From assembly GCF_033153115.1 (NCBI RefSeq), contig NW_026889813.1, positions 3,472,001 through 3,536,000 on the forward strand: DNA of 64,000 bases. Reading direction: 5' to 3'. This DNA is from Saccostrea echinata. Taxonomy: Eukaryota. Position 1 is the first letter of the stretch. Every line of letters begins with the position of its first letter. Shown here piece after piece: positions 33,746 to 46,179 of this stretch. A model generated the notes under the pieces. That model saw nothing but the letters and a program-made list of their open reading frames with translations, made no database searches and had not been told where the DNA came from. A program made the translations under genes and the position numbers.

Positions 33746-35177
33746 CACTTTTATAGTTTTAAATTTTCGTCTTTTCAAAGACTATTTTAAATTTTTTATA
33801 GGCTTGTTTATTTTCCTTCAATTATCTATCCTTTATGCATTCTCATTCTTGATATAAGAAACACTAGAGAGAGATCAAATCGTAACAATCCAATGCACAG
33901 TTGTCAGTCAGGCGGAACAAATCTCAGTACATTTATAAGCACACTTTCTCCGAGGACAAGAATAACTCACTCTGTGTTACTCGCTACAGGTATTCTCGGC
34001 AGCATTGAGCTGCGATGAATTTCAATTGTATATATTCCTTAGAAATTAATCACATTGCTTGTATTCTGTCTGCATGTGCTACTAGTGCTTGTCTGGGTTA
34101 CATGTAGTATGTTACGTATTGCTTGAATTTTTTGAGCTTAATACATGTATATTTAGAATAACATACATGTACTTTTGTTTTTCGTCAATGTTCTAAGACC
34201 TTAAGTTCTGAAAAATTAGGGCTTCATATATCAGTAACTGTACTCCCTTGGATTTCATTTAGGCCTATATAATTTGCACACATTAATGGCATGTTTTTAT
34301 TATATCCAACGGAAATGTGTTGTAAAATAAATAGCCTAGACATAAAGAATAGAATTCCAGAGACAGTAGACATTACCATTATGTACAATGAGAAGTAAAG
34401 AAAAATATCAATTATTACATTTGGAGATAACAAACTCAGAATATCAATGAAAGTTTTCCTCCTACCTCTACTCACTGAAATAAAGATTTATGAAAAACAA
34501 ATTTTTACATGTATTCAGCCTAATGTCATTAATCGGAACGGAAATCGACAAGCTTTTTGCAGAGAAAAAAAACCAAGCCCGGCCCTATAGGTCAGATCCC
34601 TATTTATATAGAAGTGAACCTTTCATTTATTTCGTGGTTAACAATTTACAACGAAAAAAAATTCAAAAAGAAATTTTTATTTGGCTCTTTAAACAAATTA
34701 AATCCCCATGAAATCATTTGAATTCATAAATCTTCGAAATTTTTTCTCCACAAAAATTTGTGCTTAGAACTACAGTAGCCAGGGTATTTGTGATTTCTAG
34801 GATGTTGAGATTCAGCCAATCAGAGAGCTATAGGAATCGTAAGAAGAAATAAGTATTTGCATACACGTATCATGGTATTATCACAGAGGTCATATCAGCT
34901 ATGTAAAAAAATCGATTTTTTACGACAATCCATCACATAAATATTGGTCATAGCAATGGGTTTTTGTTCTTTGTTCAAATGACTGCCCAGTCTTAGGAGA
35001 TTTCCACTAGCTATTAGTATACCTCTATTAAGAATACTCAATTTTGATTGGCTTGTTAGAAGGCTTTTAAACTCAATAATGACTCCAAAAAGTACCATTT
35101 ACAGCAATAATGACCTAGGAATCATTGCACGTGGGGTATAATGTATGAGGCGCCGTTTTGGTATTTACTGCCAAAAA

Positions 35178-35640
35178 GTGATATCACCTATTCGAATAGG
35201 TGATATCACCTATTCAATTGGTGATATCACCTATTCGAATAAGTGATATCACCTATTCAGCTTCTGAATAGGTGATATCACCTATTCGAATAGGTGATAT
35301 CACCTATTCGAATAAGTGATATCACCTATTCGAATAGGTGATATCACCTATTCAATTTGAATGAGTGATATCACCTATTCGAATAGGTGATATCACCTAT
35401 TCGAATAGGTGATATCACCTATTCGAATAGGTGATATCACTTATTCGAATAGGTGATATCACTTATTCCTTTTGAATAGGTGATATCACTTATTCGAATA
35501 GGTGATATCACCTATTCAAATCAAATAGGTGATATCACCTATTCGAATAGGTGATATCACTTATTCGAATAGGTGATATCACTTAATCATTTTGAATAGG
35601 TGATATCACTTATTCCAATAGGTGATATCACCTATTCAAA
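35178..35640. repeat. Tandem array of the 22-bp double palindrome GGTGATATCACC-TATTCGAATA (left TIR)
   Basis: About 20 units, with occasional short insertions at the TTCGAA centre. Confidence 0.95.
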
Positions 35641-38600
35641 TTATTTATGAAATAACAACTGCTCCCAAGACTATAGCCTTTAATTCTCATTTACTTTCAC
35701 TTTCGTTTTATAACTTACCATTCTTGCAGACAATGGATTACAGCTTCGCATTTAGTTTTAAGCAGCCCAGTAGAATTTGTAGTTTGTTTTGCTCACAAAT
35801 TATATTTATTACACTTATCTATCATGTATACTATAAGAAAATTCAAAGGGTCTGTAAGTCTCGTTGACTTTCACTTTCGTTTTATAACTCCCGGGTACCT
35901 CAGCGTTCTTGGAGACAATGGATTACTTAAGTTGTAAGCATCGCAGTGGAATTATTAAACTTGTAGTTTGTTTTGATTCACGATTGTTGCAAAGAAGAGG
36001 AGAAAATGGATTGATAGATGCAGGTAAATAGCGTTTAATTGCTTTATTTTTTCATTACATAACGTAAACACAAGCTATTCCGAGGGGGCCAAGATTAGCC
36101 AACATACTTAAGCATAAAGGGAAAATTAAATCGTTTTTATTCTAAAATCGTCTGTATTCAAAAGGTACGCTTATCTACAGATTGGTTTCATAAATTTAAA
36201 GCATTGATTTAGCTTACAATATGGTATAATTTGGAGTATTGGACAGGTATACATGAGATTGGGATATTCAATGCGATGTCATTGAAAGCAAATAAAAAAA
36301 TAGATGTACCCAAATGCATCGACCATGGGAATACAAAGTTGAATACCACGTCGATAACATATGATCTTTGTAGAAAACACATTTTTTTAATTTAATTACT
36401 ACAATAAATAAAAATGGTCAGCTCAAAATTGGTCATTCTGTAGGCTACCCTGTCTATTCAGAAATAAAAATGGTCACATACACTCAAAAAATAATTATTT
36501 TTTATTCTACAAAGAAGAAGGCATTTTTTTCATTTACACATACAAACTGTATTAACTGCTAAGTTTCATGACCACCCCCCCCCCCCCTTTTCCAATACTT
36601 CTACAATTATGAGACAGACTTTTTTTTTCTTGAAATAGGCATTTTTCTCCATTTGTCATAACATATTACAGGGCTGCACAAGGTACTGAAAAAGAGACAG
36701 CGCTTTGAGTGAATGTGTTATCCATGTGTCTGCAAATGAAGCAGATCCCCCAGTTATTATACTCATGGAGAGTGTAACAACTTCCAACTTGTTAATGACG
36801 GAACTCCATTTAAATCAGGTACAAGTTAAAGTTTAGGCTGCACAATTCTTTATTACAATATTCAAAACTTAATACTTCAGGATCAAGTTTACACAAGCTC
36901 ACATTCCATGGTTACTTACAACACCATTATGCTAGATAAATTTGTTATACACTTTCATGTTAAATAGTCAAATTTGATTGGTTTAAAAAACATTTGTTAA
37001 CAAGTACTATTACCATACTGCATGCCAGACATTACATCCCAATGGTTGAAAATGCATGACTACGGGTAACAGTATATACAGTAATAAAAAATGTTAACTG
37101 TGCAGAATGTTTGCACGTTCGTTTCACCTTGTTGTTTTCTTTAAAATGCATTCTATAACAAGAAAAATATTACCTGTTTATTTTGGGTGATGTGAAATTC
37201 TTACCCCTTAAAAACCATTGCTGACCGAGGCGAGGTCAGCGATGGTTTTTGTGGTATAACAATTTCACGTTATCCTACTAAACATGTAATATTTTCATGT
37301 TATATGTACTTCTATTTGTAAATGTTAATGACTGTGAAAAACATAAATATTTATAAATTAGTAAAATCAATTTAATACACTATGAATACACAAAAGGACA
37401 AATTTGTACATAATTCTCTATGATTTGGTTAATTAGTTTATATAAAGGATGTAAATGGACATGACATATCATTGTTAATATTCAAGAAAGTGTTCACTGT
37501 TTTTCTTGTAGATGCTCCTTTCCATCTGATGTTTTCCAGGTTTTTGTGAAAATTTTCTTAAAATGGCACCATTCAACTACAAATACTATGCCAGTGGAAC
37601 TGTGATATCAATCAACTGCTTAAGACACTATTAATTGGCAGAAAATTTATTTTTTTTTATTTGGGACAAGCAATCTGTTTCAAACATTTTATACCTGCAA
37701 ATTGGTACATGTACTTCATGAAATGCTTGAAGGATGCTAAAGGCTACTGAAATTCCAAGCCAGATGAAATTCAAAAGGATTGATACAAAAGTCATTTGAA
37801 GTTTTCTATTCTTAGTGATGAGTGTTTTTCAGGATGCCCTCTGATATCATAGGTACAACTGGTCACTGTCCTTTGTTAGTTACACATGCAGACAACTTAT
37901 TAAGGCAGTGATATAAGTAGCTCGAAGTGATGCTTTATTGTTTTCCTCAGATTTATAACCTGGATTGATCTCTGATGCAGTAATTTAAAGCCATGTCTTT
38001 TCACTGTCACAAAGTACTGAAATAAAAATAATTTTGATTAAAATATTTCTTTTAATTCACATCATTAAATTTTTAAGCTACAGAAATTCAAATTAATTAC
38101 CAATTAGTAAATAGAAATCTTTAATTGATTAGCAAGCCTTTGCATTGTCAGATCCTTTTCTGAAAGGGCCATTTACCTTTAACAATGTCAGGACAGGTGA
38201 GGCAACTGGCTGGTCTTCATGCTGGAAGTGTGTGTTAACTCTGTAATCTTTTTAAACAAAACCATCCAGTGATGTCCTAAGATTGCCAGATAAGCAGACA
38301 TATACCTGTATTTAAGAAAGATTCTGTAACATGACATAGAATTTTTGCACAGCTTGACGCACAACTGATGGTATCTTAGGTGCCTGCAAAATAATAAATC
38401 TGGCACATATTTATTTATTTGATACAAATCAGAACAAAATTTGTCCTTTTACAGAACAAATTATTTTCATTTTAAAGAAAAGAGAAATGCATATGTACTG
38501 TTTTAATACATATAACCTGTATTATTGGATATTTTCACCCCATTCTAATTTTTAAAATATTCACTCTTTCACCCTTGAAAACAATTTTGCCCTTTTAAAA

Positions 38601-44572: not shown

Positions 44573-44607
44573 TTTTGGCAGTAAATACCAAAACGGCGCC
44601 TCATAAT

Positions 44608-45661
44608 CAGTCTAGACGAACTCCAAAAACAGCGTGAACTCCGAAAACGAAGTCTTTGGCTCCATCATGCATTGCGGCAAAATGGCGTCCGATGTAAACA
44701 AACGATGGATTGTCGTTCGCTTTCTCCAAATATACGGCTGCACAATTGTGGATTTAGTGCATTATTACTTTATTTTATTTTTTGTTGAATGGATAATTGC
44801 ATTTATTAAATTATTTTGTGAAAATTGACTTATTTATTGCTTCAAACTCTTGCATAATAGTGAATTGGATATACGACATCGAATTTAATACTGCCGGTAA
44901 GAAATATTTTCTTATTTAATTTATTGTCTCCTTGATTTAAATTTTATGTCGTTCCTACAATAAAGGTGCTTAATTTTATTTGTTTTTGAAGACACGCAAC
45001 TTGTATTCATTTTAATCAGAAAATGTGCTTTTTTCACCACGGAGCAGAGATATTAACGGGTTCATTTTTAGAAGACATGTTGTGCCCTTAATATATCCAG
45101 AAGAGTGGTTTTTAAAGTCTTCATATTGATAGATAATAGTTTTAAAAATGTTTTCATAATAATATATGTTCGTATATCGGTAAATGACGATGGTAAAAAC
45201 TTACGCGTTCAATTCAGATGTCGTATGCAAATAAAAAACCAGAATGCTAATTTATGTGTAAAATTCAGTCAAGTTTTTAACAGTTACAATATATATTGTC
45301 CCATTTTGCATATATATCCCTTTTATTATGCATATTTACTTCTCAAAACGTATCATTTTCTCTGTAATTGATCTGACTTGAAACGTTAACTTTGGAAGTA
45401 AATATCTCCTTTATTGCAAATAAAATCAAAAATCTGACAAATACGATCTCTTCCGAAGTCTTTTATTTAGCATTTCTGAGTACTGATATATTTGCCATAC
45501 TTTCCAAAACTTTGCACGGACAGTTTTTGTAGACCCATCATTTTTGCCGAAAAATCGCCATTTTTTGTGTGTGTGCGCATGCGCGGACTCGATTTTCGGA
45601 GTCTTTTTCAGTCTCAATTTCTTACTTCCGGAAACGCTGTTTTTGGAGTTCGTCTAGACTG
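44608..45661. mobile_element. CAG..CTG TIR element with 5-bp TSD ATAAT
   Basis: Perfect 27-bp TIR cagtctagacgaactccaaaaacagcg; ataat at 44603-44607 and 45662-45666. Confidence 0.9.
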
Positions 45662-46179
45662 ATAATAATGACCGGTCAATAAAAATAATGACCGCTAAAA
45701 ATGACCTGTTAATCCAAATTCCATTCAAATTTTAAAATTAATGCATACAGTAATGACTGTTCATTACAAAAAATGCCGTTATAAAAATATGTATATTCTT
45801 TTTATGATACGGAATACGATTGTCCTTTAGATGCGTCATAAAATTTATCGTTTTCATTGAAACTTTCGTTACAATGTCAAATTCAACGAATGCAGACTTG
45901 GCTCTTTTGTACAGTAAAAGTCTGCACCAGATTGTCATTGTACTCGGAAATGGTATTTGTGAATTTATAAAAATGCATGTTACTGACAATCACAGAGTGT
46001 TTTAATAAATCGGCGGTGCAAAAACTTACAAGACTTGCAGGCGAAAAGTAAACAACTTCACTAGCGAATCCCGATCCCGATGAAACACTGATAATAACAG
46101 ATCGTAGATCTAATACACAGTTGATTATTTTAGTAATTAAGCCTACAAAAATTGTCTTGACTTATATCGGTATAATAAA

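What the first reader, a model, noticed from the sequence alone, without database searches (positions are those of the whole stretch)
35138..45672. 9.5-kb IS3EU-like transposon with a hidden 6-bp TSD, carrying a spliced cargo unit (Pack-type element)
Seen in sequence: exact inverted 45-bp termini 9.46 kb apart, and ATAATG on both sides after removing the nested 44608-45661 element. The outer flanks then join into one continuous aatgacc-rich repeat (...ggggtataatg|accggtcaat...), confirming a single insertion. Known (recalled): TAY..RTA ends with 6-bp TSDs characterise IS3EU. Inference: with no transposase present, the interior of promoter motifs and exon-like blocks looks like captured or domesticated genic DNA moved as a unit, analogous to Pack-MULEs. 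I know of no such description for IS3EU.
Basis: partly seen in the sequence, partly recalled or inferred. Interest (0 to 1): 0.8.

Follow-up and report, generated by a model that had tools for sequence, protein, structure and literature searches.

The report
Large non-coding IS3EU-like transposon copy
This is one of roughly a hundred near-identical 9.4-kb copies of a young cut-and-paste transposon with IS3EU-type ends; it encodes no protein but gives spliced non-coding RNAs, and nothing shows that it carries captured host genes.

Summary
Window 35144-44605 is one 9,462-bp TIR transposon. The inverted termini match exactly for 72 bp, not 45. The hidden 6-bp TSD ATAATG is real: the 1,054-bp element at 44608-45661 belongs to a family that made 5-bp TSDs in 7 of 7 other copies, and four paralogous copies of the host repeat read straight across the insertion site.

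The whole unit transposes. The genome holds 327 matching TIR ends and about 100 copies of the interior at 94-100% identity. All 14 long copies checked but one have their own perfect 6-bp TSD.

TA..TA ends plus 6-bp TSDs are the published IS3EU/GingerRoot hallmark, but no transposase partner was found.

The interior has no ORF over 90 aa, no Pfam domain, and no similarity to IS3EU-type transposases of the same genome. It is partly built from nested repeats.

RNA-like contigs show introns with standard splice sites on both strands, forming two convergent units. Their exons are full of stops, and I saw them only in family copies.

So "IS3EU-like, no transposase, spliced unit" is supported. "Pack-type captured genic DNA" is not. 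Gene capture by this lineage is already published (GingerRoot, Styx). Earlier scan notes (s1-808040, s1-820307) may describe other copies.

The parts
35138..35143 (.). [quoted passage not shown]
   Evidence: Sequence. Paralogous empty sites carry a single ATAATG.
35144..35215 (+). Left terminal inverted repeat, TATGAGGCGCCGTTTTGG..., exact for 72 bp against the right end
   Evidence: There are 327 such ends in the genome and 0 in the control.
35178..35641 (.). Left subterminal array, about 20 units of the 22-bp GTGATATCAC+CTATTCGAATAG unit (two abutting palindromes). Presumed transposase-binding sites (inferred).
   Evidence: TRF. Rfam gives only sub-threshold hairpin hits there.
35847..35902 (+). 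Two 18-bp arm motifs (AGGGTCTGTAAGTCTCGT and TAACTCCCGGGTACCTCA), mirrored in the right arm. Candidate promoter or binding blocks (inferred).
   Evidence: In the window these motifs occur only at these two places.
35903..36023 (+). Plus-strand unit, first observed exon. Only its 3' boundary (donor CAG|GTAAAT) is defined; the 5' limit is unknown.
   Evidence: Joint 36020->36669 (cut +3) in 3 runs; sequence.
36024..36671 (+). Plus-strand GT..AG intron, 648 nt
   Evidence: The dinucleotides are kept in 4 other copies.
36672..37538 (+). Plus-strand downstream exon region; extent approximate
   Evidence: Acceptor at 36671/36672. Contigs run 36758-37538 at intermediate depth.
37510..38016 (-). Minus-strand unit, exon C (last observed exon). 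Stops in all frames.
   Evidence: Contigs at depth 400-1600; translations.
38017..38176 (-). Minus-strand GT..AG intron (GTAAAT...TTTTATTTCAG)
   Evidence: Joint in all 4 runs; sequence; conserved in other copies.
38177..38305 (-). Minus-strand exon B, 129 nt
38306..38750 (-). Minus-strand GC..AG intron (CAG|GCGAGT...AAATACAG)
   Evidence: Joint 38304->38750 with 4 ambiguous letters in all 4 runs. Boundaries placed by reading the sequence.
38751..38859 (-). Minus-strand exon A, 109 nt
38860..41759 (-). Minus-strand GT..AG intron, 2.9 kb, holding the nested tandem-repeat element
   Evidence: The loose end at 38861 maps to 41762. Donor CAAATACAG|GTATGA.
39860..40564 (.). Nested repeat: a 156-bp tandem array plus (AACAGACA)n. 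Absent from the older subfamily of the element.
   Evidence: TRF. Older copies lack element positions 4717-5421. Related arrays occur in unrelated loci.
41760..41791 (-). Minus-strand upstream exon U. Only the 3' part is supported by RNA contigs.
42086..43535. Nested 1.45-kb MITE with CAGGTCCAGTACAATC... TIRs and a 5-bp TSD ATAAG (42081-42085 and 43536-43540). Present in the 16 near-full-length interior matches and, apart from a 433-bp internal difference, in the older copies.
   Evidence: copy alignments.
44053..44118 (-). Right-arm copies of the two 18-bp arm motifs, separated here by an E-box and a CTCGCGAGA-like spacer
44207..44573 (.). Right subterminal 22-bp array
   Evidence: TRF.
44534..44605 (-). 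Right terminal inverted repeat, ending ...CGGCGCCTCATA
44608..45661 (.). A second, unrelated 1,054-bp TIR element inserted across the outer element's right junction. Its 5-bp TSD ATAAT lies at 44603-44607 and 45662-45666.
   Evidence: 7 of 7 other copies have 5-bp TSDs.
45667..45670 (.). The last four bases (AATG) of the right ATAATG TSD. Its first two bases (AT) are 44606-44607.

Best explanation
Window 35144-44605 is a full-length copy of a young, non-autonomous cut-and-paste DNA transposon family of IS3EU/GingerRoot type.

Shown:
- It moves as a 9.4-kb unit and duplicates 6 bp of target.
- It has TA..TA ends, a 72-bp TIR and arrays of a 22-bp double-palindrome unit about 400-460 bp long.
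- It has no protein-coding capacity.
- Its interior partly grew by nested insertions of other repeats.
- Transcriptome-like contigs show two inward-facing, convergent, spliced transcription units whose exons are closed in every frame.

Inferred:
- An IS3/IS481-like DDE transposase encoded elsewhere in the genome binds the subterminal arrays and mobilises it in trans. Intact ORFs with the Pfam rva_4 integrase-core domain (PF24764) are numerous there.
- The two units are driven from short motifs that both arms share in inverted orientation.
- The RNAs are non-coding by-products, or possibly regulatory. They are not a captured host gene.
For: Family and mobility:
- 165 forward and 162 reverse TIR ends, 0 in the control. 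The first 24 nt with up to 3 mismatches give 709 ends.
- At least 11 other full-length interiors at 98-99% identity.
- 106 candidates for a unique 799-bp interior piece. The 40 that were scored all match its full length at 94-100%.
- Perfect, different 6-bp TSDs in 9 of 10 long copies, in four copies of 13-20 kb and one of 30.5 kb, and in 8 MITEs.

Hallmark: IS3EU families have TA..TA termini and usually 6-bp TSDs, and GingerRoot is the same (PMC10045372).

No coding capacity:
- The longest stop-free frame is 90 aa.
- All 55 stop-free pieces of 45 aa or more are Pfam-negative above noise.
- tblastn with an intact 521-aa rva_4 transposase of this genome scores no better than against shuffles.
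- The exons of a sister family's split transposase gene match nothing except a shared repeat.
- No family copy appears among the genomic rva_4 or HECT hits.

Transposase sources exist: 382 rva_4 candidates, many with intact 440-530-aa ORFs. One of these matches the IS481 and IS3 models.

Splicing:
- Joints in 4 runs from 2 studies fall at GT-AG, GC-AG and GT-AG on the minus strand and GT-AG on the plus strand, with polypyrimidine tracts.
- Depth contrasts between exon and intron exceed 100-fold.
- The splice dinucleotides are kept in 4 other copies, including the older subfamily.

Accretion.
Against: - No partner transposase was tied to these TIRs, so the superfamily call rests on ends and TSD alone.
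- The runs are only guessed to be RNA, and contigs cannot give strand, starts or ends.
- Only 35650-39900 was laid with contigs, so the right third has no RNA evidence.
- Only 40 of 106 interior candidates and 150 of 382 rva_4 candidates were scored. A diverged parental locus or a weak split-transposase relic could have been missed.
- A 30.5-kb TSD-flanked copy (G000:C1:47625763-47656308) could not be read and might be an autonomous form.
- Amplifying a 9.4-kb non-coding element to about 100 copies is unusual for a passive passenger.
Confidence: 0.7

Rival explanations
1. Relic genes. The two convergent spliced units are decayed descendants of the two convergent genes (transposase and a cargo gene such as a HECT ligase) carried by autonomous IS3EU relatives. 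Promoters and splice sites survive, but the reading frames are gone. This is compatible with non-autonomy but makes a specific claim about origin.
For: In this genome rva_4 transposase hits and HECT last-exon hits lie 3-8 kb apart in convergent orientation at 12 loci (coordinates). The sister locus L076 shows a HECT exon facing a multi-exon rva_4 gene. The element has the same inward, convergent topology.
Against: There is no similarity at the protein or DNA level to either gene and no HECT or rva_4 Pfam signal. Exon C has at least 5 stops in every frame, so any decay long predates the 98-99% identical burst.
Confidence: 0.2
2. Pack-type capture. The interior is a fragment of a host gene, coding or lncRNA, acquired at the DNA level with its introns and then amplified.
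For: A genuine multi-exon unit with standard splice sites sits inside a transposase-less element. The lineage is known to capture gene fragments, often with loss of the transposase (PMC6839031).
Against: There is no homology to any protein family and there are stops in all frames (and the Pfam calls). The 40 scored genomic matches of the exon region all span its full 799 bp, intron included, at 94-100%, and there are only 106 candidates. The older subfamily already has the same exons. Transcription starts next to motifs that both arms share, which points to an element-borne promoter, not a captured one.
Confidence: 0.08
3. Cryptic autonomous element. A transposase is encoded in many small exons that were not recognised.
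For: The 9.4-kb form is the modal and most successful form. It is transcribed and spliced. Multi-exon IS3EU-like transposase genes exist in this genome.
Against: No stop-free piece of 45 aa or more matches any domain. tblastn with an intact IS3EU-type transposase is at shuffle level. The RNA-supported exons are closed in all frames.
Confidence: 0.03
4. Two independent small elements (MITEs) that happen to bracket 8.5 kb of ordinary DNA.
For: The family does have MITEs of 190-830 bp.
Against: The TSDs match, and the flanks are contiguous in four paralogous empty sites. The same interior lies between the same ends at dozens of loci, each with its own 6-bp TSD.
Confidence: 0.01

Closest known systems
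[quoted passage not shown] 2019, PMC6839031; Kojima & Bao 2023, PMC10045372)
   Same: TA..TA termini, 6-bp TSDs, TIRs, element size of about 8-9 kb, and the existence of transposase-less derivatives.
   Different: No IS3/IS481-like DDE transposase is encoded here and none has been linked to these ends. The arms carry ~400-460-bp arrays of a 22-bp double palindrome; the passages I read from those papers do not mention such arrays.
GingerRoot elements with acquired gene fragments, and Pack-MULEs
   Same: A transposase-less element containing a unit with exons and introns.
   Different: Those are defined by identifiable parental genes (79-98% identity). Here no parental locus and no protein homology were found, and the unit exists only inside family copies.
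Styx, a 7.9-kb IS3EU element of Zymoseptoria (PMC10853768)
   Same: A large, recently active IS3EU-type element with 6-bp TSDs that carries more than a transposase.
   Different: Styx carries four coding sequences, including its own transposase. This element carries none.
IS3EU-like rva_4 + HECT transposon families in the same genome (earlier scan notes; loci)
   Same: Same genome. Two inward-facing convergent transcription units. L076 has a 22-bp-period array next to its transposase gene; whether that array is subterminal was not established.
   Different: Those encode an rva_4 transposase and a HECT ligase. No sequence similarity to them was detected here.
Classical non-autonomous derivatives and MITEs (Ds, mPing)
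   Same: Mobilised in trans through shared ends. The family also has short MITE members.
   Different: The dominant form is 9.4 kb, far longer than usual, and it is not a simple deletion derivative of a known autonomous copy.

Membership tests
IS3EU/GingerRoot | 5'-TA...TA-3' termini | tested here: met
   TATGAGG...CCTCATA in the window and in every family copy read. Criterion from PMC10045372.
IS3EU/GingerRoot | 6-bp target site duplication | tested here: met
   Window ATAATG. Also 9 of 10 long copies, 5 of 5 very long copies and 8 MITEs, all with different 6-mers.
IS3EU/GingerRoot | Terminal inverted repeats | tested here: met
   72 bp exact.
IS3EU/GingerRoot | Encodes an IS3/IS481-related DDD/E transposase (autonomous members) | tested here: not met
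   No ORF over 90 aa, no Pfam hit, and tblastn with an intact rva_4 transposase at shuffle level. This is expected for a non-autonomous member.
IS3EU/GingerRoot | An autonomous relative with the same or similar ends (link to the superfamily's transposase) | tested here: inconclusive
   About 30 TIR ends sampled show only this interior or MITEs. No rva_4 hit lies within a listed TIR pair. The lists were capped, and a 30.5-kb copy could not be read.
Pack-type (gene-fragment-carrying) TIR element | An internal segment homologous to a host gene located outside the element | tested here: not met
   All 40 scored matches of the exon region span its full length with the intron, out of 106 candidates. 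No protein homology. Caveat: 66 candidates were not scored.
Pack-type (gene-fragment-carrying) TIR element | Exon-intron structure inside the element | tested here: met
   Four introns with GT-AG or GC-AG boundaries supported by contig joints.
Ginger1 / Ginger2 / Polinton (other integrase-type elements; Ginger2 and Polinton also give 6-bp TSDs per PMC6839031) | TG..CA (Ginger) or AG..TC (Polinton) termini | tested here: not met
   The termini here are TA..TA. The Ginger1-like family of this genome ends TGT..ACA.

The most novel reading that the evidence does not exclude
The payload of this very successful 9.4-kb family is a pair of conserved, convergently transcribed, spliced non-coding RNA genes driven from motifs in the arms. 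These RNAs would matter for the element itself, for example by feeding small-RNA pathways or titrating the partner transposase. That would make it a transposon family whose cargo is a lncRNA unit, not a protein.
Probability: 0.1. Interest if true: 0.6.

Novelty: new member of a known kind. Interest (0 to 1): 0.3.

Why it matters
The element gives a clean, well-bounded example of a young non-autonomous IS3EU-type family in a bivalve-like genome, with end sequences, TSD length, an empty site, subfamilies and MITE derivatives. This is useful for repeat annotation, because its spliced, expressed interior can be mistaken for host genes or lncRNAs at about a hundred loci. It also shows that a 9.4-kb element without a transposase can outnumber any autonomous source, which raises the question of which transposase drives it. 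It does not reveal a new mechanism. Gene capture and cargo in this lineage are already published.

Tried and rejected
- A weak TMC-domain hit (E 0.06) was rejected. The genome-wide TMC search scored all 23 candidates and none lies in a family copy.
- The IS481 model search led to a Ginger1-like family (integrase + OTU, TGT..ACA ends), which is not the partner.
- The extra DNA in the 13-20-kb copies contains no rva_4-type ORF. It is presumably nested insertions; one holds long ORFs that look like LTR-retroelement gag/protease, named by eye only.
- A borderline tblastn hit (IERWWRTL-like, E 0.02) lies on the wrong strand inside an intron and is at chance level.
- Rfam and tRNA scans found only sub-threshold hairpin hits in the palindromic arrays.
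- I searched for relatives of the TIR and cross-checked the listed TIR ends against rva_4 and HECT coordinates. No co-location was found.
- Look-up of earlier findings by sequence was blank.
- Exons were examined one by one.

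
Full report
**Observation.**
- The left end reads ...GGGGTATAATG|TATGAGGCGCCGTTTTGG... and the right end reads ...CCAAAACGGCGCCTCATA|AT, followed directly by CAGTCTAGACG....
- The two termini are exact inverted copies for 72 bp. Each is followed by an array of a 22-bp unit, GTGATATCACCTATTCGAATAG, made of two abutting 10-bp palindromes (35178-35641 and 44207-44573).
- The element spans 35144-44605, 9,462 bp.

**The hidden TSD.**
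- The 1,054-bp insert at 44608-45661 has 28-bp TIRs and ATAAT on both sides.
- Its family has 261 first-look candidates in the genome. All seven other copies I read carry perfect 5-bp TSDs of different sequence, so a 5-bp TSD is the family rule.
- Removing the insert and one ATAAT restores CCTCATA|ATAATG|ACCGG, which matches the left ATAATG.
- Independently, the last 130 bp of the left flank belongs to a repeat with at least 288 first-look candidates. Four paralogs run uninterrupted through ...GGGGTATAATGACCGGTCAATAAAAATAATGACC..., which is left flank, one ATAATG, then right flank.
- This is a paralogous empty site. It excludes the reading of two independent small elements.

**The whole unit is mobile.**
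- The terminal 29-mer (up to 1 mismatch) occurs 165 times forward and 162 times reverse, against 0 for the reversed control. The first 24 nt with up to 3 mismatches give 709 ends.
- The 8.6-kb interior has at least 11 other full-length matches at 98-99% identity. A unique 799-bp piece has 106 candidates, and the 40 scored all match its full length at 94-100%.
- Nine of ten 8.9-9.5-kb copies have perfect, different 6-bp TSDs. So do four copies of 13-20 kb and one of 30.5 kb, and eight MITEs of 190-830 bp.
- Copies at 92-95% identity form an older subfamily.

**Superfamily.**
- Kojima & Bao state that complete IS3EU families always have TA..TA termini and usually 6-bp TSDs, that GingerRoot has the same features, and that the two form one lineage (PMC10045372).
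- By Cerbin et al., Ginger elements end TG..CA (4-bp TSD for Ginger1, 6 bp for Ginger2) and Polinton elements have 6-bp TSDs with AG..TC ends. The Ginger1-like family of this genome ends TGT..ACA.
- The ends and TSD therefore fit IS3EU/GingerRoot. This is hallmark-level evidence, not a transposase link.

**No coding capacity.**
- The longest stop-free frame is 90 aa.
- All 55 stop-free pieces of 45 aa or more were scanned against Pfam. Nothing rose above noise and nothing was transposase-like. The one intriguing hit (TMC, E 0.06) was rejected by a genome-wide TMC search.
- The genome does hold many IS3EU-type transposases. PF24764 (rva_4) has 382 candidates, many with intact 440-530-aa ORFs.
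- One 521-aa ORF (L081) matches rva_4 at 1.7e-85, and among bacterial models it matches IS481 (1.6e-11) and IS3 (2.8e-10).
- tblastn of that protein against the element scores 19.6 bits, the same as against shuffled sequence.
- The exons of a multi-exon sister gene (L076) match nothing except a shared tandem repeat.
- No family copy appears among the genomic rva_4 or HECT hits. So the interior is not recognisably decayed IS3EU coding sequence.

**Interior make-up.**
- A 1.45-kb MITE (42086-43535, CAGGTCC...GGACCTG, 5-bp TSD ATAAG) sits inside the element.
- A 705-bp block holding a 156-bp tandem array plus (AACAGACA)n (39860-40564) is missing from the older subfamily. It recurs in unrelated loci.
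- The interior therefore grew partly by accretion of other repeats.

**Transcription.**
- Five runs from two studies hold 38-46% of the interior's words. Their contig sets are transcriptome-sized (51-75 Mb).
- Laid on 35650-39900, depth differs more than 100-fold between blocks.
- Joints shared by all four runs skip 38017-38176 and about 38305-38749. Read on the minus strand these are GTAAAT...TTTTATTTCAG and, after the allowed 1-nt shift, CAG|GCGAGT...AAATACAG, a GC-AG intron.
- A loose end at 38861 maps to 41762, where the minus strand reads CAAATACAG|GTATGA. This gives a 2.9-kb intron that contains the nested tandem-repeat block.
- On the plus strand a joint defines the intron 36024-36671 (GCAG|GTAAAT...TATTACAG|G).
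- The two units face each other and meet near 37510-37540.
- All eight splice dinucleotides are kept in four other copies, including the older subfamily.
- Every frame of exons U, A, B and C has stops.
- I examined exons one at a time and did not join them.
- Caveats: the runs are only guessed to be RNA, contigs give neither strand nor ends, and some joints (for example 36749->37510) are non-canonical and may be deletion variants.

**Arms.**
- Beyond the arrays the two arms share only two 18-bp motifs in inverted orientation, at 35847-35864 / 44101-44118 and at 35885-35902 / 44053-44070.
- These motifs lie just upstream of the transcribed blocks. A promoter carried in both arms would explain the convergent transcription. 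This is an inference.

**Is it Pack-type?**
- The defining feature, a parental host locus, was not found. The exon region exists in about 106 places, and all 40 scored matches span its full 799 bp with the intron at 94-100%.
- There is no protein homology, and the older subfamily already has the same exons.
- The test is incomplete because 66 candidates were not scored.
- The topology resembles the convergent transposase/HECT pairs seen at 12 loci in this genome, so a relic origin is possible. No sequence evidence supports it.

**Literature and novelty.**
- Gene-fragment capture with loss of the transposase is documented for GingerRoot: 22 of 77 intact elements carry fragments, with exons and introns (PMC6839031).
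- The IS3EU element Styx carries four coding sequences, two of them proposed to have been co-opted (PMC10853768).
- What remains is a new, well-characterised non-autonomous family whose interior is spliced and non-coding.

**Limits.**
- The partner transposase is unidentified.
- Earlier scan notes call this an oyster/bivalve genome. I did not verify the species.

Noticed in passing
window 44608-45661; G000:C64:3585364-3586417 (L068): The 1,054-bp TIR element (CAGTCTAGACGAACTCC..., 5-bp TSD) has a 100% identical copy 69 kb downstream on the same contig, with its own TSD ATCCA. The family ranges from 91 to 100% identity with 261 candidates, so it looks recently active. Superfamily unresolved: CAG..CTG ends with a 5-bp TSD.
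   Followed up: partly
window 42086-43535: A second CAG..CTG element (CAGGTCCAGTACAATC...) with a 5-bp TSD ATAAG is nested inside the transposon. It has internal inverted repeats, and a 433-bp segment is inverted or absent in some older copies.
   Followed up: partly
window ~35012-35143 and 45667 to at least 45900: The transposon landed in a high-copy host repeat (at least 288 candidates, 96-98% identical) that starts TATTATACCTCTATTAAGAATACTC and is rich in AATGACC motifs. Its type was not determined.
   Followed up: partly
window 39860-40564; also L040, L042, L047, L076: A ~156-bp tandem array followed by an (AACAGACA)n microsatellite recurs in unrelated loci, and many RNA contigs end at its 5' edge (39856/7). 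From memory it resembles the tandem-repeat-containing MITE / Helitron-associated elements described in bivalves. This was not tested.
   Followed up: no
L040-L047 (e.g. G000:C54:20223000-20232999): A young family longer than 8.2 kb with TGT..ACA ends. It encodes a 771-aa protein with an IS481/integrase-like core and a C-terminal region that reads by eye like an OTU protease (DPKGDGNCQF...GDHLTL...EHYVS; not scanned against Pfam). This fits a Ginger1-like element. Several copies are intact.
   Followed up: partly
12 loci, e.g. G000:C36:9751096-9754904, C5:16154558-16159460, C8:9026560-9034431: rva_4 (IS3/IS481-like) transposase ORFs lie 3-8 kb from HECT last exons in convergent orientation. This fits earlier scan notes of IS3EU families carrying a HECT ligase.
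   Followed up: partly
G000:C1:47625763-47656308: A 30,546-bp span bounded by this family's TIRs with a perfect 6-bp TSD GTTGAC. About 21 kb of its content is unread. It could be nested insertions or a long autonomous form.
   Followed up: no
window 35694-35715 and 35868-35889; 44080-44100 (minus strand): The left arm carries two copies of CTTTCACTTTCGTTTTATAACT, which is ISRE/IRF-like when read as GAAAGTGAAAG. The right arm has CACGTGA and CTCGCGAGA motifs at the matching place. These may be promoter elements; they were identified by eye only.
   Followed up: no
G000:C2:6326996-6336459: The only one of 10 long copies without matching TSDs (flanks TTTTTC and GATCCG). This may reflect recombination between copies or a flank deletion.
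   Followed up: no
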